From the IMG/VR virus record IMGVR_UViG_3300027985_001318, positions 62,001-126,000 of that record: a stretch of 64,000 nucleotides of DNA. The stretch is one strand, 5' to 3'. Within the stretch, counting starts at the first letter, position 1; every line of letters starts with the position of its first letter. The notes beneath the pieces are model-generated. The model had not been told where the DNA came from. It ran no database searches and saw only the letters and a list, made by a program, of their open reading frames with translations. The position numbers and the translations under genes were made by a program. Positions 13,994 through 35,032 of this stretch are shown here, piece by piece.

Positions 13994-15967
13994 ATGGCAG
14001 TACATGACAACGGCCAAAGCAACCAAGGCCAGCCCCAGCAACCGACTGGCGGTCAGCCGCAACAGCAACAACAGACCCAACAACAAGGACCGGCTCAAAT
14101 GTCCCAACAGACTACCAACTTCAACTTCAATCCCGCGGCCGGTGCCGGCGACTTCAACCTGGACGACCTCATCGGTTCCGGTATCAGTCCCCTGGCCCCC
14201 ATCGCCGACAGCGCCAAGCTGACCGAACTGCAACAAGCCCTCCGTGAAGTGCTGTCCAAGGACGGCGGTAAGACTCTCCTGCCCGGTTTCGCTATCGACA
14301 TCGTCGATGCTGCCACTGCTCGCACCAAGGGTTCTGCGGTCCTGGTTTCTCACGCCACTCAAGTGGCCGGTGTTACCAACATCGCCGTGATGACCTGTAT
14401 CCTGGAAGCCTCTGTTGCCAACCAGTCCAAGGTGCAGTACGTTTTCAACCAACGTACCTATGAACTGGAGCCGACCGCCGGCACCAGCTGGACTTCCGCG
14501 TTCTGGAACCGTGTCGAGAACCGCATCCGCGATCAGTACGGCCGTGGCGATAACGTCAAGGTGTTCGACGTAGGTGTTATCTCTGTTCCGTTCGACTTCG
14601 ACGTCGAAGACAAGCAACATGTCCACAACCTGGCCCGGATCACTTCCAGCGCCTGCGCCATGTGCTCCGCTTCCCTGACCGGCCGTAGCGTTCGCCCCAT
14701 GAACCTGAGCGCCCAGATGCTGAAGCACAACCTCCAGCTGCAAAGCCGGGTTGACTTCACTACCAAGGATGCCAAGGATGCCGTAGGCCGTCCCGTTCGT
14801 GCCGATGTGGTTATCTCCACCTTCCTGGGCAACCAGCAACAGCAACAAGTGTACCAAGGTTACGTCGATCAAGGCCAGGACTCCGTTCCGCTGGTCAATC
14901 TGTCCGGTTATGTTGATGTCAACTACGTTGGGCCGACCCAGACCACCAACGGTGTGCAGACCCTGAACAGCACTCAGCACTACATGGCCGAGTTCGTCAT
15001 GACCGGTTTCGAAACCCGTCTGTACGACATGACCATGGAACGCCTGATGTTCATCACTGCTACCGCCTCCATGATGGATCGCGAGTTCACCTGGGCCCAC
15101 GCCATGCTGCCGAAGCCGCGGCCGGCTGATGCCAAGGGTAAGGATATCCGTGACATCGGTATCCTGGGTATCGAACAGGACTTCTTCGGCACCGGCGCCC
15201 CCAAGCGCATCGAATTCGGTGTCAACAAGGATAGCAACCAGAAGGTGGTGGAAATCTCCAACTTCCTGGCGACCCTGTTCTACAAGGAGCTGATCATCAG
15301 TATCGACTGCGATACCGTTGGCCCCAACTCCTACCTGACCAACGATCTGCTGCTGGCCGCCGGCAAGGGTGAGGCTTCCGTAGCCGCTCAATCCCGGATC
15401 CTGAACGCCTGTAACCAGCTCACCAACGGCGCTTTCGCTCCGCTGTGGGCACAGTCTGGTCTGCGTCCCGATCAGATCATCTACAACCGTAACCTGACCC
15501 TGCCGCGTAGCCAGTACGTCGACAACTCCGGTACCCTGCGTTCCGGCGCCGACCTGGACTACATCGCTCGACTGAACCTGCTGGAAAAGGATCTGCAATC
15601 CTACAACGAGTTCACTCGTACCATGGAAGATCCCAACCTGCCGAGCGAAGTCAAGCTGGCTACCCAAGAAGCTATGCTGAAGATGCTGTGGCCGACCGCC
15701 GTCGTCACTGGCGAACTGCATCGCCTGACCTGGGAACCCAAGATGTTGCAAGTCCTGGTCAAGGCCATGGAAAACGCCGGTGTGGCAATCCGTCCGGAAG
15801 GTCAACGCATCTCCGCGTGGGGCAATACCGCCATCCGTAGCAACCAAGCCCTGATGTCCTACGGTAACTTCGGGCTGTCCGCTGGCCTGTTCAACTACGG
15901 CAACAACGTAGGTGCCATGGCCGGTCCCGGTGGCTTCGGTGGTCGTATCTCCAGCTTCGGGATGTAA
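13994..15967 (+). CDS. chmA: chimallin, major phage nuclear shell protein
   Basis: 657 aa; immediately upstream of nvRNAP beta'N; motifs D.VGRPVRAD, LSGYVD, RDIG.L, D.DY; strong codon bias; Q-rich N- and G/F-rich C-terminus. Confidence 0.88.
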   Translation: MAVHDNGQSNQGQPQQPTGGQPQQQQQTQQQGPAQMSQQTTNFNFNPAAGAGDFNLDDLIGSGISPLAPIADSAKLTELQQALREVLSKDGGKTLLPGFAIDIVDAATARTKGSAVLVSHATQVAGVTNIAVMTCILEASVANQSKVQYVFNQRTYELEPTAGTSWTSAFWNRVENRIRDQYGRGDNVKVFDVGVISVPFDFDVEDKQHVHNLARITSSACAMCSASLTGRSVRPMNLSAQMLKHNLQLQSRVDFTTKDAKDAVGRPVRADVVISTFLGNQQQQQVYQGYVDQGQDSVPLVNLSGYVDVNYVGPTQTTNGVQTLNSTQHYMAEFVMTGFETRLYDMTMERLMFITATASMMDREFTWAHAMLPKPRPADAKGKDIRDIGILGIEQDFFGTGAPKRIEFGVNKDSNQKVVEISNFLATLFYKELIISIDCDTVGPNSYLTNDLLLAAGKGEASVAAQSRILNACNQLTNGAFAPLWAQSGLRPDQIIYNRNLTLPRSQYVDNSGTLRSGADLDYIARLNLLEKDLQSYNEFTRTMEDPNLPSEVKLATQEAMLKMLWPTAVVTGELHRLTWEPKMLQVLVKAMENAGVAIRPEGQRISAWGNTAIRSNQALMSYGNFGLSAGLFNYGNNVGAMAGPGGFGGRISSFGM

Positions 15968-16050: not shown

Positions 16051-17358
16051 ATGAGCGCATACGTTCCTTATATCTCCAAACACGATCAATTAGAGGAGGA
16101 ATATGTCAGCGGTTTACATCTTGATATCGTTGATTTCGATTTGATGGCTGCGATTAGTTCGCGCCCTCCAGTCTACGCCAACGATCTTGATGTTAACGAA
16201 ATCGAGTCAAGACGCAAACTTCAGGATGAGCTCTACACCCACTACGAGTCGGACACCATAGACAACATCCCCGTTTGTAGCTGCCAGAAATACAAAGGCG
16301 CTCGCTATTACGGGATAGTCTGTGATCGTTGCGGTTCAGAGGTAATGATTCCCTCGGAACGGCCAATAGAATCCGCTCTTTGGATCCGCGCCCCAGAAGG
16401 CGTTCCTGGTCTGATAAACCCATTAGTTTACAGTAACTTGGTAGCGACCTTCAAGAAAAACGGCGTAAGTATCATTGAGTGGTTGATCGACCCGTATTAC
16501 AAGCCCCCGAAAAATAACAGCGGCCAAGTAATTGCTCGACTGGAAGCTTTAGGGGTGCAGCGTGGCTTGAAGAACTTCATCTTCAACTTCGACCAAATCA
16601 TCACCATCCTCACAGCTAATACGTTGTTCAGCAACAAAAAGAAAGCGCCTCTGCAACGTTTCAAGGAATGGATCGACCGTAACAGAGATCGTCTGTTCCC
16701 CCAAGCTTTGCCGATACCATCCAAGCTTTCCTTCATTCTGGAAGACTTGGCGGTTGGTCGCTTCGCTGACCACAACATGGCTGATGCTCTGGATGCGGTA
16801 AGTACCATAGCGTCACTGAACTCTGGCATAACGGCACCTTCACAGCAACAACGTGAAAGTCGTGCAGTGAAAGCCTGTGCTCAACTGGCCTCTTTCTACG
16901 AAGGTCAATGTCGTAGTAGCCTTGGTGATAAACCTGGGCTGTTTAGACGCCACGTTTTTGGTACAAGACCAGCAATGAGTTTCCGGGCAGTAATCACCTC
17001 GCTGTCGGCTAACCACCGATATGATGAGATGCACTTGCCTTGGTCGCTCTCTGTGTCACTCTTCAGGGTCCATATCTACAACTACTTGTTGAAGATGGGA
17101 CTTTCTCCACTGGAATGTCGTAAACAAATCGCTGAAGCGATCATCAAATTTGATCCGGTAATTTACGATATCCTGAACAACCTTATTTCCACCCACAGCT
17201 CCGGTAAAGGTTGGCCTTCGTTCTTGCAACGAAACCCTTCACTGAAGCGTTTGTCTGCTCAACGTCTCTTCATTACCAAAATCAAAACAGATGTCGAAGA
17301 TTACACGATTTCGTTCTCTGTTCTTGTACTTAAGGGAATGAACGCTGACTTTGACGGT
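16051..17358 (+). CDS. non-virion RNAP beta'-N subunit (gp55-like), exon 1
   Basis: Zn ribbon CSC...CDRC, KPGLFRRHVFG.R, RAVI, RNPSL, ends NADFDG. Confidence 0.9.
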
Positions 17359-18725
17359 AGAGCATTGCCGTCAATAGTTTCTTGGTTTCTGTGGCTAAGA
17401 AACTTACTAAACTCATCTAACTGCTGGAAGTACGTAATATAGTAGCAACCAAAGCGGAACTGGAAACGGTAGACGTCATGGTATGAAAATGGTTACTATT
17501 AGCTCGTCGTGAGACGTCAAAATCGTTAATCAGCAACGAAGCACCTTAAACTACGAAAGTAATCCTACTCCTAGGAGTGTGTGTGTTCAGAGACTATCGA
17601 AACCACATCGATGCAATGTCGATGGAAGGGAGTAGAGTAGGGGAAACCCGAAACGGTGAGTATTGGCCACATTTGAGCCAGTAAAGATATAGCCCACAAT
17701 GTTCTGTTTCCTAGTTTCATCTTCCAGGAGGTGAAATGAAGAAAGAAATCCCAGGAACTGTAAATTATAGCGCTGATGACCGTGGAATTATTTACGGCCC
17801 AGATGGTAATGTGAGAAACACCTATCGGAATGGCGATGGTTATATCACTACACTAATCAAGACCGACAATGGTATTTTCCGAACTGTTGGTGTTCATCGA
17901 TTAGTGGCGCTAGCTTTTAAGGCCGAGGAACGTTCGCCAGAGAAATTCCAAATCAATCATCTTGATGGAAACATTGAAAACAATGTCCCAGACAACCTCG
18001 ATTGGGAAACTCCAGCAAACAATAACCTACACGCATCCTTAGTTTCAGAAGGGTACGAACGAAAGATCGTTACTGTAAATCAAAAAGGTTCAGTTAACTA
18101 CTTCAAGAATCTTCGCGAAGTGGCTGTTTTTGCCAATTCAAAAATAGGCGATGTCTGGAAAGCTTTCAGAGACAAAGAACAGATAGCTGGACTAAGTATT
18201 TACATTAATCTAAACCTCGGGCCAGAATTTCATCTAACCAAGATCAAAAACAGAGACCATTTAGGTAGACAGATAAAACGAAATCTTAAGATGCAAAACC
18301 TAGAAACAGGAGAAATTAAACTAGGCCATGCTTCTGAATTAGCTAGATTTTTCGGAGTCTCTACAGCGCACATTACTACCTCAGTAACAGAAGAAATTCT
18401 GCATTTATTCAACGAAAAATGGATAATTGTAGATGAATGCTCGGAGTTTCCAGAAATAGATAACGAAACCTGGCTATATCTGAAAGAACGTGGAAAATCA
18501 AAACCTGTCTTTGCAATCGATCCAAGCAATCGACAAGTTATTTTACGTTTTAAAAGTGCAGCCGAGTTCGTTAGAAATTCTGGTCTGAGTAAGAAAGCTG
18601 TTACTGTTAGGTTGAAAGCGAGTAAGTGCGGTAAACTAGATGGTTGGGCGTTTGGTTACCAAGATTGTTTAGATGAACAATCGTTAAAAGAAATGTAAAG
18701 AACTGGGAAACAGAACGGTTTTACG
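17359..18725 (+). mobile_element. group I intron in nvRNAP beta'
   Basis: P1 TTGACGGT/GCCGTCAA with U-G at the splice site; P AACTGCTGGAA, Q AATCAGCA, R GTTCAGAGACTA, S AAGATATAGCCC; terminal G18725; splicing restores NADFDGD. Confidence 0.9.
17736..18698 (+). CDS. intron-encoded HNH homing endonuclease
   Basis: VHRLVALAF...INHLDGNIENN..DNLDW; NUMOD1-like C-terminal repeats; AT-rich. Confidence 0.9.
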   Translation: MKKEIPGTVNYSADDRGIIYGPDGNVRNTYRNGDGYITTLIKTDNGIFRTVGVHRLVALAFKAEERSPEKFQINHLDGNIENNVPDNLDWETPANNNLHASLVSEGYERKIVTVNQKGSVNYFKNLREVAVFANSKIGDVWKAFRDKEQIAGLSIYINLNLGPEFHLTKIKNRDHLGRQIKRNLKMQNLETGEIKLGHASELARFFGVSTAHITTSVTEEILHLFNEKWIIVDECSEFPEIDNETWLYLKERGKSKPVFAIDPSNRQVILRFKSAAEFVRNSGLSKKAVTVRLKASKCGKLDGWAFGYQDCLDEQSLKEM

Positions 18726-19640: not shown

Positions 19641-20036
19641 ATGACCGTTCCAGTTACTCCAGCGCTTTCTGCTCTGGGATGGGCAACTACGGTATCGGAC
19701 CGTTTAGATATCGAGTTTGCAAATTTCATTGCCTCAGATATCGCACAGTCTATACTGTTCCCGATAGCATCGCTGCCCTATTTGATCAAAAAGTACCAGA
19801 GCGATTTCCAAGGGCTCTGTAACGAAGCAACTACGGTGCTTCGAGAACATCTCAGCGGCTTGTTTGATCAAGTGGAACTATCGGTAACTTATGTTGTTGA
19901 TAGTGACGATGAAGCAAAGATTCAGTTGATTTTTGCTATCACCGTAATCGAGAACGGCGATGTTTTCAATATTCGTCAGGCGGTTGAGAACATCAATAGC
20001 AAGGTATTGAAACTGATGGAGATTAACAATGGCTGA
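19641..20036 (+). CDS. conserved small protein (possibly gp25-like baseplate protein)
   Basis: AGGAG RBS, upstream TATG; P.LS..GW...FIASD.AQS pattern; function inferred. Confidence 0.55.
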   Translation: MTVPVTPALSALGWATTVSDRLDIEFANFIASDIAQSILFPIASLPYLIKKYQSDFQGLCNEATTVLREHLSGLFDQVELSVTYVVDSDDEAKIQLIFAITVIENGDVFNIRQAVENINSKVLKLMEINNG

Positions 20037-20589
20037 TTCACGACTCCAGAATTCCAAGCAGGAACTAGCCGCTTTGCATGCGCTGATTGAAGACCCTGCC
20101 GTTCGTATCGAACTCAGCGTATTCCGAGCCAGATATTGGCAACTTATCAAGAATCTTCATAGTGCGCCCGAAGGTTTACTGATCTGGCGTGCTGAAGTCG
20201 ACCATAGTCTGTTACGATACGTAGATATCGTAGATGGCGGCAAAGTAGTGGCTCGAGTACCACCTATTCTGGCCGAATATCCTAGCGAAACCAAATACCA
20301 TAACAGCAGAGCTATGTCGAAGATTTCCAGCGACATAGAACACTGCATGGACATCAGTCCAATCGCTGCCGAGAAACTTATTGATAGCGTTTTACCGGCG
20401 CATTTTTCCTCGATCGACAAGTCAGATAAAATGAACATCACTAAGCAGACCATTCGTGATGCTTGGGATAGCCTTTACCTATTTTTCAACGAATCCCCGC
20501 CTTTCTCTAAAAACAACGAAAAACAGCCAGGCAAACAATCGAAACCGATAGCCAATCAACTGGAAGTTGAAGGATATGACGACTGGTAA
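20029..20589 (+). CDS. conserved hypothetical protein
   Basis: GGAG RBS; VDIVD.G..V..VPP pattern; synteny. Confidence 0.7.
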   Translation: MADSRLQNSKQELAALHALIEDPAVRIELSVFRARYWQLIKNLHSAPEGLLIWRAEVDHSLLRYVDIVDGGKVVARVPPILAEYPSETKYHNSRAMSKISSDIEHCMDISPIAAEKLIDSVLPAHFSSIDKSDKMNITKQTIRDAWDSLYLFFNESPPFSKNNEKQPGKQSKPIANQLEVEGYDDW

Positions 20590-21721
20590 AAGATCTGAGT
20601 TTACTTTCAAAAATACCAAAACAGCTAAAGTTCTTAAGATCCTGGAAATGGCCGATATTCATCTCGGCCATCAAAGAACCCCAACTAGCAGCACCTTAGA
20701 AGCTTTAGAGAAAGTAATCAATAACAAGTCTCTTAGAGAACTGGATATCCTGTTAATAGCCGGTGATTTTTTCGACCATCTCCTGCAATTACCAGAAGAT
20801 CGCGTCTTGCAAATACAGGCTTGGATTTCCAGAACTCTGGTACTTTGTAAAAAACATGACGTGGTCGTTAGAGTTCTGGAAGGTACTGGTAGTCATGACT
20901 GCAAGCAATCAAAAAGCTTCACCAACATCAACGAGAACGCCGGTATTTTCGCCGATGTTAAGTACGTAGATAAGATTTCAATAGAGCTGATCGAAAGATT
21001 TGGAATCTCTATACTCTACGTGCCGGACGACCAAGGTCATAATGACAACGTCTGGAAAACAGTACAAAAAACCTTGCTCGAAGCAGGCTTAGAAAGCGTC
21101 GACATGGCTGTGATGCATGGGTTCTTTGAGTTTCAGGTACCTTTCGGTGCCCAGGATAGTAACGCACATATTCGTGCTCGCTACGAGTCCATAGTTGAAC
21201 AAACCATCTTTATAGGGCATCATCACACTCATCGATTAGTCGGTAAAGTAGCTGTATCTGGAAGCCTTAACCGGCACACTCACGGCGAGGAGGAAGACAA
21301 GGGCTGTTTACTGGCCACGTATACCGAGGCCGGTCTAAAAACAATGGAGTTCTTAGTCAACCATAATGCCAAAGTTTACAAAACACTTGAAGTGCGTGGT
21401 AAGACAGTAGAAGAAACAATGAAGGCTTTGGATCTGCTCGGATTACCCTACGATAGTGCAGTGCGCTTACAGGTAAACGGACAAGACCCGATCTGTTCGG
21501 TGTTTCGCGATGTAAGTATGCGCTACCCGCAGTATGAGATGACGCTAGACAAAGAAAAATCGAAAGCGCTAGACGAGCGAATCGAAAGTATCAAATTCAG
21601 TTACGAACCAATAACCATAACCAAGGATAATATTCGACAACTCTTAACTGAAAGGTTGGTCGGAGCCATAGACCAAAAAGATCTTCCTGCATGTATGGAG
21701 TTGTTAGAAGAAGTCCTCTAA
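20576..21721 (+). CDS. sbcD: Mre11/SbcD-like metallophosphoesterase nuclease
   Basis: DIHLG, GDFFD, GT.SHD, MHG, IGHHH motifs; start probably ATG 20576 (track 20567). Confidence 0.85.
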   Translation: MTTGKRSEFTFKNTKTAKVLKILEMADIHLGHQRTPTSSTLEALEKVINNKSLRELDILLIAGDFFDHLLQLPEDRVLQIQAWISRTLVLCKKHDVVVRVLEGTGSHDCKQSKSFTNINENAGIFADVKYVDKISIELIERFGISILYVPDDQGHNDNVWKTVQKTLLEAGLESVDMAVMHGFFEFQVPFGAQDSNAHIRARYESIVEQTIFIGHHHTHRLVGKVAVSGSLNRHTHGEEEDKGCLLATYTEAGLKTMEFLVNHNAKVYKTLEVRGKTVEETMKALDLLGLPYDSAVRLQVNGQDPICSVFRDVSMRYPQYEMTLDKEKSKALDERIESIKFSYEPITITKDNIRQLLTERLVGAIDQKDLPACMELLEEVL

Positions 21722-21730
21722 GGAGCGACC

Positions 21731-22576
21731 ATGGGCGTTAGCTCTTTCTATAACCGCGAGATGGGTGAAAAACTCCCCATCTCAATAGGTACGGCTCTGG
21801 CGCTAGAGACCTTGTTAGATCCATCGCTTACCACAGCCTGGACTAACGCAAAAGTACCTTATCTTTACCTGAACCTCCACACTCTGTTCAGAAACCTCTA
21901 TGGGTCTATGACGGTGTTGGATAAGGTGGGTGTGAGCGACGTTGACTTCGCTCAGGTTCTGGCAAAAGAAATCGTATACATCAGAGACTTTCTCGAGAAG
22001 GACGGCCGTGGGACTAAGTTAGTGGCTTATTGTCCAACTTACGAAGGACTGATGCAGCGTTTCAAATACGCCAACGTCAAAACCATCAATACCCCCAAGC
22101 AGAAAGAATATGTGTTGTTAAACACCACAACACTCAAGGTCCTGATCAAAGAACCTGAGAAATTCAAACAACAACTCGGGGTAGAGTTGGAGGTTACCGA
22201 TTACAAACCACCTAAACACATGGAAAGAAACTGCGTGATAATGACACATCACCCAGTGGAGCTTCTATTCTCTCCGGTTTCAACTACCTTACTAGAATCC
22301 CATACAGGGAAGTATAAAAAGTTTCCTGAATGGAATACTAAGTTAGGTAGTAGTTCAGACACCAGCCACATGCCTTTCAATGCCCTGACATTACAAGTGT
22401 TTGGCGATGGTGTTGATTTTGGTCCAATGGACCGGAACGTAAGAGCAGTTCTAATGGCTTTGGCTCAGGAAAGAAAATGGACTGCCGTTACAACAAAGGA
22501 CCGGATTCTAGTCTCGCTAGACTTGATGAAGGATAGGTTGTCAGCTGAGCGACTGAAGTTGCTACTGCTGTCTTAA
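21731..22576 (+). CDS. conserved protein (gp66-like)
   Basis: TAAGGAG RBS; SIGT.LALE, TLFRN, LLESHTG, QVFGD motifs. Confidence 0.7.
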   Translation: MGVSSFYNREMGEKLPISIGTALALETLLDPSLTTAWTNAKVPYLYLNLHTLFRNLYGSMTVLDKVGVSDVDFAQVLAKEIVYIRDFLEKDGRGTKLVAYCPTYEGLMQRFKYANVKTINTPKQKEYVLLNTTTLKVLIKEPEKFKQQLGVELEVTDYKPPKHMERNCVIMTHHPVELLFSPVSTTLLESHTGKYKKFPEWNTKLGSSSDTSHMPFNALTLQVFGDGVDFGPMDRNVRAVLMALAQERKWTAVTTKDRILVSLDLMKDRLSAERLKLLLLS

Positions 22577-22628
22577 TTTACGTATTGCACAGATATGTGA
22601 GACATAACAGGATCCCTAGGAGTCGACA

Positions 22629-23546
22629 ATGGGTGAAAATGAAAATATGGCCCAAGCGCCAAGCCAGGACGCTGGCAAACGCCCTTGGAATGCTTTGGAC
22701 GAATGGAAACTGCGTCTGATTGGACGTGTTCTCGATGGAGCCAAAAAGAACTCTACACTGAAGCTGGCTATGATAGCCAACCAGCTTCGGTTCCAGGCGT
22801 TCACCAATATCGAGAACGACCCCACCGGTGGTAAGGTGGAAGCTAAGCTCGGTGCTTACGACATGTACGCTGTGTTTAAAGTCATCGAAAACGCAGCAGC
22901 TAACCGCGATTTCAAGGCCCTGAGCATTCCCTGTAAAACCGGACCGGAAAGCGAACAGGTATTGGAATCGACCATTATCATCGGCCGAGATTCTGAGCAA
23001 TGCATTTTTATTGCTCTGAAACCCGGCCCTGGTTCGCAATGTCAAACCAACATGAGCTTCCAGTTCTACCCAAGCTCTTACCATAGCCTTCAGCGTGCTG
23101 ATGGTCAGGAAACCTCCAAGGCTGAGATTTCAGAGTACTGGACCTTTGCCTGGCTGGAACTTATGCGTAATCTTTGCGGTTCCGTACTGGCTTTCTCTGG
23201 CAAAGATCGTTCCGGGCAGGAAAATGTCAACGGCGAAGCGCTGGCTGAACGTCCCAAGCAACAATGGCAGGGCGGTGGTCAGAAGAAACCTTGGCAGGGT
23301 AATGGTGGCGGCGGTGGTGGTTACCAGAAGAAGCCCTGGCAAGGAAACAATGGTGGCGGTGGTTACCAGAAGAAACCTTGGCAGGGTAATGGTGGCGGTG
23401 GCGGTGGTTACCAGAAGAAGCCCTGGCAAGGAAACAATGGTGGCGGTGGTAATAACAACTACCAACAAAAGTCATCCAACGGCTACAGTGGCGACATCAG
23501 CGTTAACGAAGGCAGTGAAGGCTTCGAGGACGGTATCCCGTTCTAA
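22629..23546 (+). CDS. gp67/Imp6-position protein with G/Q-rich linker and SSB-like tail
   Basis: Synteny; KKPWQG repeats; ends GFEDGIPF. Confidence 0.7.
   Translation: MGENENMAQAPSQDAGKRPWNALDEWKLRLIGRVLDGAKKNSTLKLAMIANQLRFQAFTNIENDPTGGKVEAKLGAYDMYAVFKVIENAAANRDFKALSIPCKTGPESEQVLESTIIIGRDSEQCIFIALKPGPGSQCQTNMSFQFYPSSYHSLQRADGQETSKAEISEYWTFAWLELMRNLCGSVLAFSGKDRSGQENVNGEALAERPKQQWQGGGQKKPWQGNGGGGGGYQKKPWQGNNGGGGYQKKPWQGNGGGGGGYQKKPWQGNNGGGGNNNYQQKSSNGYSGDISVNEGSEGFEDGIPF
23280..23453 (+). repeat. coding tandem repeat, (45+42 nt) x2
   Basis: Four QKKPWQGN(G/N)GGGG(GG)Y units arranged A-B-A-B at DNA level. Confidence 0.9.
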
Positions 23547-23548
23547 CC

Positions 23549-23580
23549 AAAAAAGGGAAGGGGATTCCCCTTCCCTTTGT
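23549..23580 (+). terminator. intrinsic terminator
   Basis: AAAGGGAAGGGG-ATT-CCCCTTCCCTTT. Confidence 0.75.
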
Positions 23581-23610
23581 TCTGTAACGACACGATCCAA
23601 TAAAAACAAA

Positions 23611-23630
23611 GACCTATATCACTATTGTGG
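23611..23630 (+). promoter_or_regulatory. early promoter
   Basis: gaccTATATCACtattgtgg. Confidence 0.65.
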
Positions 23631-23649
23631 CAACTAGTGAGGAAAGACC

Positions 23650-25191
23650 ATGCGTATTTACATAAAGGATCTCAAAGGGAACTCGATAACCGAAAGGCTT
23701 CGTGAGGTTGTCACTGAACATAACGGAGAGGAGATAGTCTGGAACGTTAATAACTACTCACAACAGACTATTTCTGAACTACCAAACCTTTTTACCTGCA
23801 TCAATGAGTATTGGGGTAAGATGCAGGGCCAGCGGCAAACTAGAATCTTTCAGCTCTACAAAGACGCTCACGATATTTTGTATTCGGTATCTGACATGCG
23901 TCGGCTTTTGGAGCGGTTACGTCCAGTGGTTTGTGAGTTGCTCCACGAGCATCATCCGGATGAGATTTATTGGTACCTGAAAACCCCAGGCAATATGGTC
24001 ATGCCAGCTACTCTGCGTGACACGCTGGCAGAGAACCATAAGCCAGAGCGAACCTATCTGCGCGAAGACTATTGTGGTCTCGCAATGGTAGCTATGCTAT
24101 TGCGTGTAATGGTTCCAATTTGGGGCGAGTTCTGTAACCAGCAAAGTGGTGCTGGCGATAGACGAGAAGTCCAAGCAGTCAAGTTACTTGACGGCTCCGG
24201 TCTGTTAGAACGACCAGAAATTGCCAAGCTTCAAACCCTTGTGGATGTACTGGTTAAGGAAGAAGCCGTGCCGTTGGCGGCATTGTTGGCTTTGAACGGT
24301 TCTGAAGACATGGGCGGTTGGTTGTTTGCTCAGACTCTACTGCGCCGGGTAGCCATCGGAGAGATTTCTCGGATGGATCAGACTATCAACATTGTCAGTA
24401 ACGTACACAAACACGTTACGAGCAGTATGGCTCAGCTGGAAAGACGCTACGGTGGGCGAGTATCCCACAAGTACGGTAACGTGGACAATGGGGAACGGGA
24501 AGACAACTCTTCCAACCTAGAAGCCCACAAAGAAATTTCTGTAGTGGCGGCTGGCGAACTCGAACTCGACGCGGTGTTTATGCGTAATATACAGAACGTA
24601 GCGCTCAAGATCGATCCAACGATTGATCTCGATAAGTTACGAATCTGTACCGAGGCTGTTGAGAAAGCTCGTTATAGTGCTCAGTTAGCTTTGGAGCAAC
24701 ACCAGGACCTGTTAGCGCAATGGTGTATGGCTGACGTTCTCTCTGTCGAAAGTATCTCTTACCTTCGCGAGAACCATTACAAAACTCTTTGCATTACGCA
24801 AGCACTTCTTTGGCATTGGGGTTTTCCCAATCTGGCGATGCTAGTTTGCGTTGGTGGTAGAGAGCGTGGTGAGAACGACATGATCATTACCGAACAGCGA
24901 AGTCGCATACCGAAAGATATCGCGGCAAAGCTGCAGAAAATGTTCACTTACTACAAAGGGGTTCCAGTACCCAATACAGTAGGTACCGAAAATAGCAAGG
25001 AAAATCCTGGACACCAGGCTATCGAAAATTTCTGCCGGTACCTGAATAATAAGATCTGGATTGATCTCAATCCGCAAGCACTACGTGAGCAAGCAAAAAT
25101 AAATACCGTGGATGGCATAATAGTTATTCATGGTTCTATTAAAGTAGAGTTGGCTCAGCTCGGTATTTTCATAGCAGAAAGACAGGAGTAG
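23650..25191 (+). CDS. nvRNAP promoter-specificity subunit (gp68-like)
   Basis: 513 aa; synteny; ERTYLREDY, M.PIWGE, QALLWHWGF patterns. Confidence 0.75.
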   Translation: MRIYIKDLKGNSITERLREVVTEHNGEEIVWNVNNYSQQTISELPNLFTCINEYWGKMQGQRQTRIFQLYKDAHDILYSVSDMRRLLERLRPVVCELLHEHHPDEIYWYLKTPGNMVMPATLRDTLAENHKPERTYLREDYCGLAMVAMLLRVMVPIWGEFCNQQSGAGDRREVQAVKLLDGSGLLERPEIAKLQTLVDVLVKEEAVPLAALLALNGSEDMGGWLFAQTLLRRVAIGEISRMDQTINIVSNVHKHVTSSMAQLERRYGGRVSHKYGNVDNGEREDNSSNLEAHKEISVVAAGELELDAVFMRNIQNVALKIDPTIDLDKLRICTEAVEKARYSAQLALEQHQDLLAQWCMADVLSVESISYLRENHYKTLCITQALLWHWGFPNLAMLVCVGGRERGENDMIITEQRSRIPKDIAAKLQKMFTYYKGVPVPNTVGTENSKENPGHQAIENFCRYLNNKIWIDLNPQALREQAKINTVDGIIVIHGSIKVELAQLGIFIAERQE

Positions 25192-25194
25192 AAA

Positions 25195-26799
25195 ATGTTT
25201 GGCAATAATGACATGTACGGTGTGACGCTGGAGATAGAAGAGTTGCTGCTCTTCCAGACCGGCACCTACAACGACCAGTATCGTCACGACTACACCGTAA
25301 ATCAACAAGGTCACGGCAATATGCTGATGGCCGCTTCCGAACAACTGAACGAAGTTACACATGAAGGTAAAAACCTTAACCCTGTCACACTGGCGCAGTT
25401 AGGTACTAACATCATTGCGCCGCGCGCTCAAGTAACCCATAACGAGTTCGTCACTATCCCGTTTGGTTGGGGACAGGAACGTTTCTTGTTCATGATGAAA
25501 GTTCGCGCCCAGCAAGCTATGTCAAACATAGTTAACTACTATTACCTCACCGGCTACACGGACAACAACGAGATCAGTTTGGTTGGAAACATTTCCCCTA
25601 ATCTGAAATTCTACATCAACAACTCCGTTCGTGTCCGCGAAGTAATAAATGCTATCAATGGAGCAAACGTATCTACGCTCCAAGGCGTGCAACTTTCCCA
25701 GGTGTTGTTAGGTACCCACAACCCAGGCGTAAGTTCCATGGGTCCGGCAGCTAACAATGAGTTCCAAATGCTGCCGAGCACAATGGCTGAAATGGCTGGT
25801 ACTTTGGCTTGTTCTCAGCAAGGTATTGCCCAGCCGACAGGTCAGTACGGTGGAATGGGTGGAGTGCCGCCACAGTACAACGGTCCGGCCATGATCGAAA
25901 CAACCCCGATGTTCCATAACGGTGCGGTACTCCAGACCCGCGATAACAACATGCCGAACCGCTGGTTGTCTCGGTTCTTGACTGGTTTTAGCGTTGGTGT
26001 TGGTGACACTTACAACGATACCACTGACAGTAACATGTTCAGTGCTATGGCTGGGGCAATGGCGGAACCTTTGTTCCAAAACGATCAAGTTCTGGCCATG
26101 TTCAAGCGTCATACATCGTTCGGTGATCCAAATTCAGGCTTCATTAGCTGGGCCGAACTCTGTAACATGAGTCCTGGTTTGGATAATCGCACCAAGGTTA
26201 ACCGGGTTAGTAACCAAGATCTTCACTACCTGCAACAAGTGAACGGTAGTGAAGCCTGGCATGCCGCGACCCGCAATGCCTGGGCTGCTTCGCTGATCTC
26301 TCAGATCTTGCCGTCTATCATGGCTCCGCTGATGTTGATGCGGGTTACTTTCACGGTAACTAACATGGTTGTTGGCGGCGGGTTGCAGTTCCAAATCCAC
26401 AGTAACACCACAGACCCTTATGTGATTACTCCGAAGTCATTCATGTCTTCGAACGTCGATATCAGCGCGTATCTTCAACAATTCCAGGCTCGAGTGCTGG
26501 CCGAACTGATGCCCTCAGTTCTCCATAGCCCAGATTGGCCGGTAAGTATCGTTGTCGATGCTCAATTGACCAGAGACATAGTGATCAATTTGTCTGTGGG
26601 CGGTGAACCAACTGAGAAGTTCGTGTTCCCGACATTTGCCGACCATCGTCTGGCTCCGGTAATGACCAACAACTACGCCAACGTACAAAACATGTCAGCT
26701 GACCTGGTAACGTTGGCGAACCAAGTAATTTCAGCCCCGTTAGGGACTTCTTCAGTGAATATGGGAGGCTATAGTGGCACAAGTTTTGGAACTGTATAA
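25195..26799 (+). CDS. picA: phage nuclear protein import factor PicA/Imp1 (gp69-like)
   Basis: Between gp68 and gp70; TGTYNDQ.R, I..GW...RF.F, GYTD, PTFAD...P patterns. Confidence 0.72.
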   Translation: MFGNNDMYGVTLEIEELLLFQTGTYNDQYRHDYTVNQQGHGNMLMAASEQLNEVTHEGKNLNPVTLAQLGTNIIAPRAQVTHNEFVTIPFGWGQERFLFMMKVRAQQAMSNIVNYYYLTGYTDNNEISLVGNISPNLKFYINNSVRVREVINAINGANVSTLQGVQLSQVLLGTHNPGVSSMGPAANNEFQMLPSTMAEMAGTLACSQQGIAQPTGQYGGMGGVPPQYNGPAMIETTPMFHNGAVLQTRDNNMPNRWLSRFLTGFSVGVGDTYNDTTDSNMFSAMAGAMAEPLFQNDQVLAMFKRHTSFGDPNSGFISWAELCNMSPGLDNRTKVNRVSNQDLHYLQQVNGSEAWHAATRNAWAASLISQILPSIMAPLMLMRVTFTVTNMVVGGGLQFQIHSNTTDPYVITPKSFMSSNVDISAYLQQFQARVLAELMPSVLHSPDWPVSIVVDAQLTRDIVINLSVGGEPTEKFVFPTFADHRLAPVMTNNYANVQNMSADLVTLANQVISAPLGTSSVNMGGYSGTSFGTV

Positions 26800-34562: not shown

Positions 34563-34621
34563 TTAAGTAATTAATTTTACTTTTCTTGTCCTCTACTACA
34601 TTTTTTAATAGGAGAAAGATT

Positions 34622-35032
34622 ATGAATTGGACTGTACACGGCGTTGTTACATTAAACGAAGAACACACGTCCCTCGCCGATGAAGTGTGTGAACATCTCC
34701 GTATCGGAGACAAAGCATACTTCATCGGCGAGCAGGACTCCTTCGGTCCAGTAACGCGTTTCTACTACTGTTCGGACTGTCATCTGGCAGAGCAAGAGCG
34801 TGAAGACGCTGAGCTAGTGTATTGTAACGACTGCGGTTGTGAAAAACCGCGGTCAGACGTCCTGGCTTGGCGTTGGTACGACTTCTACGCACCGCAGGGA
34901 GATGAACCTATCATGGTTTGTTCCGAGTGCCGAAAGAAGGCCAAACATCTTAATCGGGTGGCTAAAGATAAAGCCGATCGCGATTGGGAGTTGGGACTCG
35001 ACCAACCAGAGGAGGACGATTTTTATTACTGA
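34622..35032 (+). CDS. Zn-finger hypothetical protein
   Basis: AGGAG RBS; CEH, CSDC, CNDC, CSEC. Confidence 0.75.
   Translation: MNWTVHGVVTLNEEHTSLADEVCEHLRIGDKAYFIGEQDSFGPVTRFYYCSDCHLAEQEREDAELVYCNDCGCEKPRSDVLAWRWYDFYAPQGDEPIMVCSECRKKAKHLNRVAKDKADRDWELGLDQPEEDDFYY

What the first reader, a model, noticed from the sequence alone, without database searches (positions are those of the whole stretch)
22629..23546. gp67/Imp6-position protein has bacterial SSB architecture, including an EDGIPF tip
Seen: a folded ~200-aa domain, then a G/Q/N/W/Y-rich linker (four KKPWQG units), then the acidic tip GFEDGIPF. Established: bacterial SSB ends in DDDIPF after a G/Q/P-rich linker. The tip docks genome-maintenance enzymes and the linker promotes condensates. 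Inference: this is the phage SSB or an SSB-Ct mimic. It could recruit host SSB-interacting enzymes and carry them into the phage nucleus, linking import with DNA metabolism.
Basis: partly seen in the sequence, partly recalled or inferred. Interest (0 to 1): 0.6.

Follow-up and report, generated by a model that had tools for sequence, protein, structure and literature searches.

The report
Phage-nucleus ChmC protein with SSB-like tail
This gene is the ChmC/Imp6 RNA-binding protein of an uncultivated nucleus-forming jumbo phage, and its tail ends in a short acidic motif, conserved across the family and nearly the same as the docking tip of bacterial SSB, which no paper I could search mentions.

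Summary
Window 22629-23546 (+) encodes a 305-aa protein with three parts: a confidently folded domain (residues ~17-195), a G/Q/N/K-rich disordered linker with four KKPWQG units, and the C-terminus GFEDGIPF. The protein is not an SSB homologue. It is the orthologue of ChmC/Imp6 (phiKZ gp67, PhiPA3 gp61, Goslar gp176). That is a published Whirly-fold homotetramer that binds phage mRNA, binds ssDNA about 3-fold less tightly, forms condensates through its C-terminal tail, and binds the import factor Imp1/PicA. Homology, gene order and the predicted fold all agree: Whirly, not OB. What appears new is the tip. An acidic motif of the type [FW]-D-[DE]-x-[ILVMF]-P-[FWM]-COOH ends 53 of 90 family members in nearly all deep clades. 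Some carry E. coli SSB's exact DFDDDIPF. It is an island of conservation after a variable spacer. The papers I could search call this segment only an "electronegative cluster". No canonical SSB gene is detectable in this genome or in five model chimalliviruses. The architecture is therefore SSB-like by convergence. The tip's partner (own nucleic-acid-binding surface, phage enzymes or host SSB clients) is unresolved, and the one complex prediction gave no answer.

The parts
22618..22622 (+). Shine-Dalgarno-like AGGAG, 6 nt before the ATG
   Evidence: Read directly from the sequence.
22629..23546 (+). CDS of the ChmC/Imp6 orthologue (305 aa, stop included)
   Evidence: ORF and translation. phrog_3284 at E 4e-30, the same family as phiKZ gp67, PhiPA3 gp61, Goslar gp176 and 201phi2-1 gp123. 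hhalign of the family profile against PhiPA3 gp61 gives probability 100%, E 2e-42.
22677..23213 (+). Whirly-like nucleic-acid-binding domain (residues ~17-195)
   Evidence: pLDDT above 90. The best structural matches are AtWHY1 Z 9.3, AtWHY2 9.1, StWhy2 8.9, PBF-2 8.7, MRP1/2 8.3 and PURA 8.1, and the next unrelated fold scores 5.5. Five of the six basic residues needed for RNA binding in PhiPA3 ChmC are basic here: K40, K45, R54, K69 and K73.
23220..23498 (+). Disordered G/Q/N/K-rich linker (residues 198-290), net charge about +7
   Evidence: pLDDT below 50; composition and charge.
23280..23450 (+). Tandem DNA repeat encoding the YQKKPWQGN(G)n units (87-bp block x 2.0, 97% identical; 42-45-bp sub-period)
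   Evidence: Tandem Repeats Finder; KKPWQG at residues 219, 234, 248 and 263.
23520..23543 (+). C-terminal acidic tip GFEDGIPF (residues 298-305), SSB-Ct-like
   Evidence: End-anchored information content is 2.4-2.9 bits at positions -6, -5, -2 and -1, against 0.8-1.2 bits at -17 to -9. The family consensus is GFDDxIPF. E. coli SSB ends DFDDDIPF.
23552..23578 (.). 12-bp G+C-rich hairpin just after the stop codon (terminator-like)
20567..21721 (+). Context: SbcD-like nuclease subunit (phiKZ gp65 position)
   Evidence: phrog_100 at E 1.5e-46.
21731..22576 (+). Context: gp66-like conserved protein of unknown function
   Evidence: phrog_3229 at E 1e-67.
23650..25191 (+). Context: gp68-like non-virion RNA polymerase component
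   Evidence: phrog_3209 at E 1e-103; tblastn hits phiKZ PHIKZ068.
25195..26799 (+). Context: gp69-like Imp1/PicA import factor, the known direct partner of ChmC/Imp6 in phiKZ
   Evidence: phrog_3141 at E 1e-79; position as phiKZ gp69; the binding was shown only for phiKZ (bioRxiv 10.1101/2024.03.27.586873).
13994..15967 (+). Context: chimallin (ChmA) nuclear-shell protein, which marks the genome as a nucleus-forming phage
   Evidence: phrog_4795 'nuclear shell protein' at E 6e-76.

Best explanation
The gene encodes the ChmC/Imp6 protein of an uncultivated chimallivirus (223,650 bp, terminal repeats). Shown here: it belongs to the same family as the characterised ChmC proteins, it sits at the conserved position, and it has the Whirly-like core with the basic nucleic-acid-binding residues. 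It also has a disordered G/Q/N-rich linker and an acidic C-terminal tip. Inferred from the PhiPA3, phiKZ and Goslar experiments: the core forms a homotetramer that binds single-stranded RNA (phage mRNAs) and, less tightly, ssDNA. The linker drives condensate formation at or in the phage nucleus. The protein binds the import factor Imp1/PicA encoded two genes downstream, and it is essential. Added here: the last 6-8 residues are a conserved short linear motif, [FW]-D-[DE]-x-[ILVMF]-P-[FWM]-COOH, and not merely a patch of negative charge. The overall design (tetrameric ss-nucleic-acid-binding core, G/Q/N linker, acidic-hydrophobic tip) therefore converges on that of bacterial SSB, T7 gp2.5 and T4 gp32. 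My inference for the tip is that it works as those tails do. (a) It folds back, in cis or between tetramers, onto the basic nucleic-acid-binding surface or the basic KK repeats of the linker, which tunes RNA or ssDNA affinity and supplies the 'sticker' for condensates. (b) When nucleic acid displaces it, it is free to dock one or more partner proteins through the terminal Pro-aromatic-carboxylate. My estimates: the tip is a selected functional motif, 0.85; it autoregulates binding or condensation, about 0.5; it docks a specific protein, about 0.55 (phage-encoded partner about 0.4, host SSB clients about 0.2; these are not exclusive).
For: Identity: phrog_3284 at E 4e-30, the family of phiKZ gp67, PhiPA3 gp61, Goslar gp176 and 201phi2-1 gp123. 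hhalign against PhiPA3 gp61 gives 100%, E 2e-42. tblastn finds phiKZ-like gp67 loci. Gene order is conserved in 16 cultured phages, with ChmA, DNA polymerase and non-virion RNA polymerase genes nearby. Fold: Whirly/PUR/MRP matches at Z 7.1-9.3 stand above 5.5 for the next fold. Five of six RNA-binding basic residues are kept. Tail: disordered, with an SSB-like composition. Tip: 48 of 81 relatives end acid-x-hydrophobic-P-[FWM]. On the tree, 53 of 90 members have x-P-[FWM], including 29 of 29 in the window's clade. This ending is present in nearly every deep clade, and 81 of 90 end acidic plus hydrophobic. The conserved island follows a variable spacer. Exact FDDDIPF or DFDDDIPF occurs in P0006, P0007, P0043 and P0053, and P0053 lies in the same gene order. 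The motif is unique in the genome. [quoted passage not shown] 10.1101/2025.11.23.690004 and PMC12571901 (essentiality). Precedents for acidic tips: SSB acidic tip and linker (PMC7145534), Hfq acidic tail autoregulation (PMC5606850), and the tails of T7 gp2.5 and T4 gp32 read.
Against: Nothing here measures binding. Tetramer formation, RNA preference, condensates and Imp1 binding are all transferred from orthologues that are only 20-25% identical in the core. The tip is not universal. Goslar (AFDGLAF), 201phi2-1 (SFDW), a 16-member clade (FDDL, DFDI, EIEF) and a few members with no acidic end (for example Vibrio phage YongXC32) lack the Pro-aromatic ending. The model phages phiKZ and PhiPA3 have P-x-F. 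A purely electrostatic 'electronegative cluster' role, as proposed in PMC11077065, would explain the acidic residues. The complex prediction gave no answer.
Confidence: 0.78

Rival explanations
1. ChmC is the missing replicative or recombination SSB of chimalliviruses. Inside the phage nucleus it coats ssDNA as well as RNA, and its tip recruits phage-encoded enzymes (DNA polymerase subunits, Rhc RNase H-clamp, helicase, SbcCD, UvsX-like recombinase), as the tails of T4 gp32 and T7 gp2.5 do.
For: No PF00436, PF08804 or PF10991 match in this complete genome. No PF00436 or PF08804 match in phiKZ, PhiPA3, 201phi2-1, Goslar or PCH45, and the T4 positive control worked. I found no paper naming a chimallivirus SSB. 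PhiPA3 ChmC binds ssDNA with Kd 184 nM (PMC11077065). Plant Whirly proteins, the best structural matches, are organelle ssDNA-binding proteins. A GFP-Rhc pull-down from Goslar infection recovers ChmC together with DNA polymerase and RNA polymerase subunits (PMC13648698). Part of the family carries gp32-like FDDL-type tips. The gene lies in a block with SbcD, DNA polymerase and a helicase.
Against: The orthologue prefers RNA, crosslinks to phage mRNAs in cells, and its knock-down phenotype was read as an mRNA export and translation defect (PMC11077065). The AlphaFold2 screen of phiKZ Rhc against all phiKZ proteins did not list gp67 (PMC13648698). A divergent OB-fold SSB could escape three Pfam models. 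Whether host SSB enters the phage nucleus is unknown.
Confidence: 0.3
2. The tip is a mimic of the host SSB C-terminus. It engages host SSB-interacting proteins, either to bring them to phage nucleic acid or through Imp1 into the nucleus, or to act as an abundant decoy that pulls them away from host SSB.
For: The last three residues are identical to E. coli SSB, as are 4 of the last 6. Some relatives carry the exact 7-8-residue SSB tip. The orthologues are among the most abundant early proteins (PMC11077065). ChmC/Imp6 binds the import factor Imp1, and a host topoisomerase is imported in phiKZ (bioRxiv 10.1101/2024.03.27.586873).
Against: Host pockets cannot co-evolve with the phage, yet tips on Pseudomonas, Klebsiella, Serratia, Xanthomonas and E. 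coli phages drift to P-S-F, P-N-F, V-P-W, I-P-W, I-P-M and L-A-F. From general knowledge, the terminal Phe and the preceding Pro are critical for SSB-Ct docking. Most host proteins are excluded from the phage nucleus. The host of this phage is unknown. The prediction with E. coli exonuclease I gave no answer, which counts neither way.
Confidence: 0.2
3. The tip has no specific partner. It is only the end of an electronegative cluster that keeps a sticky, basic RNA-binding protein soluble and suppresses non-specific binding. Its likeness to SSB-Ct is coincidental.
For: This is the reading given for the S/D/E-rich segment in PMC11077065. The linker here is net +7 and the last 25 residues net -4. 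Some lineages keep only acidic plus hydrophobic residues without Pro-Phe.
Against: Charge alone does not explain the position-specific conservation of Phe at -7, Pro at -2 (2.9 bits) and an aromatic or Met residue at -1 (2.4 bits), placed exactly at the free C-terminus across proteins whose cores are about 20-25% identical. The linker and spacer vary freely in length and sequence.
Confidence: 0.25

Closest known systems
ChmC / Imp6 of nucleus-forming jumbo phages (PhiPA3 gp61, phiKZ gp67, Goslar gp176, 201phi2-1 gp123; PHROG 3284)
   Same: Same protein family and the same gene position between gp66 and gp68/Imp1. Same Whirly-like core with the basic surface residues. Same plan of a disordered G/N-rich tail followed by an acidic end.
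   Different: Only about 20-25% identical to the studied proteins. The linker is longer and built from basic-aromatic YQKKPWQGN units rather than N/G repeats alone. The tip is the canonical I-P-F-COOH form, whereas phiKZ and PhiPA3 have P-S-F and P-N-F and Goslar has L-A-F.
Bacterial SSB (E. coli Ssb, Pfam PF00436)
   Same: Modular layout: an ss-nucleic-acid-binding core that tetramerises (inferred for ChmC), a G/Q-rich disordered linker of similar composition, and an acidic tip ending I-P-F-COOH. In both, the linker is tied to phase separation (PMC11077065; bioRxiv 10.1101/2022.01.17.476650).
   Different: The core is Whirly-like, not OB. The orthologue prefers RNA. The linker is basic (+7) rather than near neutral. 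Position -4 of the tip is Gly, not Asp. No homology can be shown: the tail-to-tail BLAST gives E 0.024 in a single comparison of low-complexity sequence.
Phage SSBs with acidic C-terminal tails: T7 gp2.5 and T4 gp32
   Same: An acidic tail ending in a hydrophobic or aromatic residue at the free C-terminus: T7 ends EDGDF and T4 ends DLDDLLNDL. One ChmC clade ends EIDLDSFDDL or DFDDLDI, which resembles gp32. From general knowledge, these tails both compete for the protein's own DNA-binding cleft and recruit polymerase, helicase and recombination proteins.
   Different: The folds are unrelated, and no PF08804 or PF10991 match exists in this genome. No G/Q/N-rich linker is visible in the last 40-50 residues of T7 gp2.5 or T4 gp32.
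Whirly / PUR / MRP superfamily (plant WHY1/2 and PBF-2, T. brucei MRP1/2, PURA)
   Same: The best structural matches, covering residues ~15-195 (Z 7.1-9.3). All are single-stranded DNA or RNA binders, and Whirly and MRP proteins form tetramers.
   Different: Sequence identity in the structural alignments is 6-12%, and there is no Pfam Whirly match. Whether those proteins have a tail of this kind was not examined. I recall a plant Whirly C-terminal acidic-aromatic autoregulatory motif from memory only and did not verify it.
Hfq acidic C-terminal tip
   Same: An RNA chaperone whose disordered acidic C-terminal tip mimics nucleic acid and autoregulates the core's RNA binding (PMC5606850). This is a precedent for the autoregulation half of the proposed mechanism.
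   Different: The Sm fold is unrelated. Whether the Hfq tail has a Pro-aromatic terminal motif or a partner-docking role was not checked here.

Membership tests
ChmC/Imp6 (PHROG 3284) | Sequence homology to experimentally characterised members | tested here: met
   phrog_3284 at E 4e-30 for the window protein. The same family matches phiKZ gp67, PhiPA3 gp61, Goslar gp176 and 201phi2-1 gp123 at E 1e-35 to 6e-81. hhalign gives 100%, E 2e-42 against PhiPA3 gp61.
ChmC/Imp6 (PHROG 3284) | Conserved position: SbcD-like, gp66-like, ChmC, gp68 (non-virion RNA polymerase component), Imp1/PicA, in a genome that encodes chimallin | tested here: met
ChmC/Imp6 (PHROG 3284) | Whirly-like fold (tandem beta-sheet plus helix repeats) | tested here: met
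   The model has strands 30-74 then helix 76-91, and strands 97-145 then helix 164-190. Whirly, MRP and PUR proteins are the top matches.
ChmC/Imp6 (PHROG 3284) | Basic residues of the RNA-binding surface (PhiPA3 K30, R35, R44, K48, K59, R63) | tested here: met
   Five of six are basic here (K40, K45, R54, K69, K73). K48 aligns with F58.
ChmC/Imp6 (PHROG 3284) | Disordered C-terminal G/N-rich region followed by an acidic segment | tested here: met
ChmC/Imp6 (PHROG 3284) | Homotetramer, ssRNA binding tighter than ssDNA, condensates with RNA, direct binding to Imp1 | not testable with these tools
   Known only for PhiPA3 and phiKZ proteins (PMC11077065; bioRxiv 10.1101/2024.03.27.586873).
Bacterial SSB (PF00436) | OB-fold ssDNA-binding core | tested here: not met
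   No Pfam match at E up to 1. The fold is Whirly-like, and no SSB or OB-fold entry appears among the listed matches.
Bacterial SSB (PF00436) | Disordered G/Q/P-rich linker | tested here: met
   G 32%, Q 14%, N 13% here against G 30%, Q 19%, P 16% in E. coli SSB. This is likeness of composition, not homology.
Bacterial SSB (PF00436) | Acidic tip D-D-D-I-P-F at the free C-terminus | tested here: inconclusive
   E-D-G-I-P-F here: the last three residues are identical and 4 of the last 6 match. The exact FDDDIPF occurs in relatives. Other orthologues deviate.
Bacterial SSB (PF00436) | Tip binds SSB-interacting proteins | tested here: inconclusive
   The complex prediction of tail 266-305 with E. 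coli exonuclease I gave no answer (ipSAE 0.01).
Whirly family (plant type) | Sequence-level membership (Pfam Whirly) | tested here: not met
   No Pfam hit. Identity in the structural alignments is 6-12%. The relationship is at fold level only.
T4 gp32 / T7 gp2.5-type phage SSB | Homologous core domain (PF08804 or PF10991) | tested here: not met
   No match anywhere in the genome. The T4 control was positive.

The most novel reading that the evidence does not exclude
ChmC is the SSB-equivalent hub of the phage nucleus. It is a Whirly-fold tetramer that coats both nascent mRNA and replication or recombination ssDNA. Its conserved SSB-Ct-type tip is a true docking motif that recruits genome-maintenance enzymes, either phage-encoded ones or host SSB clients handed to Imp1/PicA. 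Nucleic-acid coating, enzyme recruitment and traffic across the shell would then be coupled in one protein. This would also explain why chimalliviruses have no recognisable SSB gene.
Probability: 0.25. Interest if true: 0.75.

Novelty: new member of a known kind. Interest (0 to 1): 0.5.

Why it matters
ChmC/Imp6 is essential, very abundant and conserved in all nucleus-forming jumbo phages. How it connects mRNA binding, the Imp1 import factor and the replication machinery is still open. A conserved, SSB-type C-terminal docking motif gives a small and precise handle on that question. Deleting six residues or changing one phenylalanine in PhiPA3, phiKZ or Goslar ChmC is feasible, and a synthetic peptide can be used to fish for partners. 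It also raises a testable answer to an overlooked gap: no canonical SSB gene is detectable in these phages, which replicate DNA in a compartment that excludes most host proteins. If the motif proves only autoregulatory, it is still a clean case of convergence on the SSB, gp32 and gp2.5 design from a different fold.

Tried and rejected
1. Complex prediction of the tail (residues 266-305) with E. coli exonuclease I (EX1_ECOLI) returned 'no answer' (ipSAE 0.00 and 0.01, controls not run).

2. OB-fold or true SSB homology is rejected. Pfam gave no hit and the fold search returned Whirly, PUR and MRP proteins.

3. A sequence search of the PDB with the family profile found only one chance hit, at E 0.35. 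No solved structure of the family turned up.

4. Homology of the tail to the E. coli SSB tail cannot be shown. BLASTP gave E 0.024 in a single comparison, driven by the last 13 residues and low-complexity sequence. I treat the likeness as convergence.

5. I considered the tip as the Imp1-binding element and ranked it low. The phiKZ complex is about 2 gp67 to 1 Imp1, although ChmC alone is a tetramer, which points to the folded domain. Binding also survived a FLAG tag on gp67, though the text is ambiguous about which end was tagged. This was not tested here.

6. I considered the tip docking the RNase H domain of the phage Rhc, because E. coli RNase HI is an SSB client (from memory) and Goslar Rhc pulls down ChmC. 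The Rhc orthologue exists in this genome. However, the published AlphaFold2 screen of phiKZ Rhc did not list gp67 (PMC13648698), and I did not test the pair.

7. Host inference failed. The window has no tRNAs, the nearest cultured phages are only about 28% identical in gp68, and the relatives carry only SRA run accessions.

8. The overlapping ORFs on other frames and on the minus strand over 22578-23637 are by-products of the G-rich repeats and not genes.

Full report
OBSERVATION. Window 22629-23546 (+) is an open frame of 305 codons. An AGGAG lies 6 nt before the ATG, and a 12-bp G+C-rich hairpin follows the stop at 23552-23578. The AlphaFold2 model built on 67 relatives has pLDDT above 90 over residues ~17-195 and below 50 over almost all of 198-302. 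The disordered part is G 32%, Q 14%, N 13%, K 11%, with W and Y at 5% each. It contains KKPWQG at residues 219, 234, 248 and 263. These units are encoded by an 87-bp block repeated 2.0 times at 97% identity. The protein ends GFEDGIPF. E. coli SSB, read from MG1655, ends DFDDDIPF after a linker that is G 30%, Q 19%, P 16%. Among 708 ORFs of 60 aa or more in the whole 223,650-bp genome, this is the only one ending acid-x-[ILVMFT]-P-[FWM].

WHAT IT IS. Pfam finds nothing. PHROGs places the protein in phrog_3284 at E 4e-30. The flanking genes match phrog families for an SbcD-like nuclease, the gp66-like protein, the gp68-like protein and the gp69-like protein. That is exactly the order gp65-gp66-gp67-gp68-gp69 of phiKZ. 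The same order holds in PhiPA3, 201phi2-1, Goslar, LucasX, BUCT660, RSL2, FBKp24, PCH45, pVp-JHP1101, RP12, Caitlin, Yong XC32 and Xoo-sp14, and in Ea35-70 with two small extra ORFs between the ChmC-position gene and gp68. Upstream lie a DNA polymerase, the chimallin nuclear-shell protein and a non-virion RNA polymerase beta subunit. Downstream lie two further RNA polymerase subunits and a helicase. The genome is a complete virus record with terminal repeats, so this is an uncultivated nucleus-forming jumbo phage. Its gp68-like protein is only about 28% identical to any cultured phage.

phiKZ gp67, PhiPA3 gp61, Goslar gp176 and 201phi2-1 gp123 all fall in phrog_3284. The profile of the window protein's relatives aligns to PhiPA3 gp61 with probability 100% and E 2e-42 over 191 columns. 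These proteins are ChmC (Enustun et al., PMC11077065). The paper reports a predicted Whirly fold and a homotetramer in solution. It reports Kd 58 nM for ssRNA and 184 nM for ssDNA, and binding to phage mRNAs in infected cells. It also reports condensates that need the C-terminal disordered region, and a severe infection defect on knock-down. phiKZ gp67 is also Imp6, which forms a stable complex of about 2:1 with the import factor Imp1/PicA (bioRxiv 10.1101/2024.03.27.586873). It tolerates no transposon insertions (10.1101/2025.11.23.690004) and scores in an antisense screen (PMC12571901).

FOLD. Foldseek's top hits are T. brucei MRP1/2, human and fly PUR-alpha, and plant Whirly proteins. Re-alignment gives AtWHY1 Z 9.3, AtWHY2 9.1, StWhy2 8.9, PBF-2 8.7, MRP1/2 8.3 and PURA 8.1. 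All cover residues ~15-195, and the next unrelated fold scores 5.5. Five of the six basic residues whose mutation abolishes RNA and ssDNA binding in PhiPA3 ChmC align with basic residues here (K40, K45, R54, K69, K73). The sixth aligns with F58.

THE TIP. This is the part that goes beyond the literature I could search. I read the C-termini of 84 database relatives and of the ChmC-position genes of 16 cultured phages. In the database set, 48 of 81 usable sequences end acid-x-[ILVMFT]-P-[FWM], and most of the rest end acidic plus hydrophobic. The alignment consensus ends FDDxxPF. Four members carry FDDDIPF, and one of them (P0053) has the full eight residues DFDDDIPF of E. coli SSB. P0053 sits in the same gene order.

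Counted from the free end, information content is 2.46, 2.44, 2.86 and 2.37 bits at positions -6, -5, -2 and -1. It is 0.8-1.2 bits in the spacer at -17 to -9. The tip is thus an island of conservation behind a freely varying spacer, which is the signature of a short linear motif.

On a tree built from the folded domain only, the x-P-[FWM] ending occurs in 53 of 90 members and in nearly every deep clade, including all 29 members of the window's clade. The phiKZ/PhiPA3 clade has P-x-F. One clade of 16 has FDDL, DFDI or EIEF endings. Only 9 members lack an acidic-hydrophobic end, and some of those may be truncated calls. Cultured examples are:
- pEa_SNUABM_54: FDTDIPF
- PCH45: YDEDIPF
- Ea35-70: FADDLPF
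- BUCT660: FDNDIPW
- FBKp24: FDNDVPW
- LucasX: DDDIPM
- RP12: SDDIPW
- phiKZ: FDEDMPSF
- PhiPA3: FDDEIPNF
- RSL2: FDDISF
- Goslar: AFDGLAF
- 201phi2-1: ASFDW

The ChmC paper shows these tails and calls the last ~15 residues an S/D/E-rich 'electronegative cluster'. It never mentions SSB. Searches combining ChmC or jumbo phage with SSB or SSB-Ct returned nothing, and the 2026 jumbo-phage review (PMC13282480), searched for SSB terms, does not mention it either.

IS IT THE PHAGE SSB? It is not a member of the SSB family. The functional question stays open, and the gap is real. No PF00436, PF08804 or PF10991 match exists in this complete genome. No PF00436 or PF08804 match exists in phiKZ, PhiPA3, 201phi2-1, Goslar or PCH45, and the method finds gp32 in T4. 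I found no paper naming a chimallivirus SSB. ChmC binds ssDNA only about 3-fold less tightly than RNA. Its structural relatives in plant organelles are ssDNA-binding proteins. A pull-down of the polymerase subunit Rhc from Goslar infection recovers ChmC (PMC13648698). Against this, the published in-cell data are about mRNA.

HOW IT MOST LIKELY WORKS. Shown here are family membership, fold, basic surface, disordered linker and the conserved tip. Inferred from orthologues are the tetramer, RNA and ssDNA binding, linker-dependent condensates, Imp1 binding and essentiality.

My inference for the tip rests on three points: position-specific conservation of Phe at -7, Asp-Asp at -6 and -5, Pro at -2 and an aromatic or Met residue at the free carboxylate. 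Together these make a docking motif more likely than charge alone. The same design is used by bacterial SSB (acidic tip plus linker, with at least 17 client proteins, PMC7145534). T7 gp2.5 (ends EDGDF) and T4 gp32 (ends DLDDLLNDL) have comparable tails. From general knowledge, all three tails both occupy the protein's own nucleic-acid-binding site and recruit partners once nucleic acid displaces them. Hfq offers the RNA-chaperone precedent for autoregulation by an acidic tip (PMC5606850).

Here the linker is net +7 and the last 25 residues net -4. A fold-back or inter-tetramer contact is therefore plausible, and it could also be the 'sticker' behind condensates.

Which protein the tip docks is unresolved. 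Strict mimicry of host SSB is weakened by the W, M, P-x-F and FDDL-type variants in phages whose hosts have DDDIPF-type SSB. A co-evolving phage partner would fit that drift better. The Imp1 complex probably uses the folded domain, given the 2:1 stoichiometry from a tetrameric protein. The only complex prediction allowed, tail with E. coli exonuclease I, gave no answer and is not evidence either way.

COMPARISON AND NOVELTY. The gene is a new, divergent member of a known family (ChmC/Imp6). Its particular features are the basic-aromatic YQKKPWQGN repeats and a canonical I-P-F end. The SSB-like architecture is convergent, with a different core fold and no demonstrable tail homology. The family-wide SSB-Ct-like motif appears to be unreported in the library I could search, and it is directly testable in the model phages.

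LIMITS. All functional statements are transferred from orthologues about 20-25% identical in the core. The host is unknown. No binding was measured or confidently predicted. The literature search covers only the held library; for example, the journal version of the Imp1/Imp6 study was not held.

Noticed in passing
window 23280-23450: The linker repeats include an 87-bp block duplicated at 97% identity. This points to a recent expansion. Linker length and repeat number vary widely among relatives (238 to 348 aa proteins with similar cores).
   Followed up: partly
L001:4947-6359 (Erwinia phage pEa_SNUABM_54); also P0049 (481 aa): The ChmC orthologue of this Erwinia phage carries two tandem Whirly-like domains (internal BLASTP E 5e-8) followed by one linker and one FDTDIPF tip. 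It is a natural 'linked dimer' variant of the family.
   Followed up: partly
whole genome G000, plus phiKZ, PhiPA3, 201phi2-1, Goslar and PCH45 records: No match to the SSB (PF00436) or gp32 (PF08804) models in any of these phages, and none to PF10991 in the window's genome. These phages have no recognisable SSB gene.
   Followed up: partly
window 23552-23578: A perfect 12-bp G+C-rich hairpin lies 5 nt after the chmC stop codon, flanked by A and T runs on both strands (terminator-like in both directions). It may delimit or stabilise a highly expressed transcript.
   Followed up: no
window 17736-18698: An HNH endonuclease ORF (phrog_59 at E 1e-22) sits just after the non-virion RNA polymerase beta-subunit gene (16051-17442). 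It is possibly a homing endonuclease like those that interrupt RNA polymerase genes in related phages.
   Followed up: no
window 20029-20589 and 34586-35032: Two other small ORFs end in acidic-aromatic tails. The gp64-position ORF ends EGYDDW, and a 148-aa ORF after the helicase gene ends EEDDFYY. They may be further tail motifs of the same general type.
   Followed up: no
G000:C1:12876-14396 (L019:1255-2775), outside the window: A 506-aa orthologue of Rhc, with an N-terminal RNase H domain (PF00075 at E 3e-25). Rhc is the polymerase-associated protein that co-purifies with ChmC in Goslar.
   Followed up: partly
window 22578-23637, other frames and minus strand: Several ORFs of 50-180 aa overlap chmC. 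They run through the G-rich repeats and are most likely artefacts of composition.
   Followed up: no
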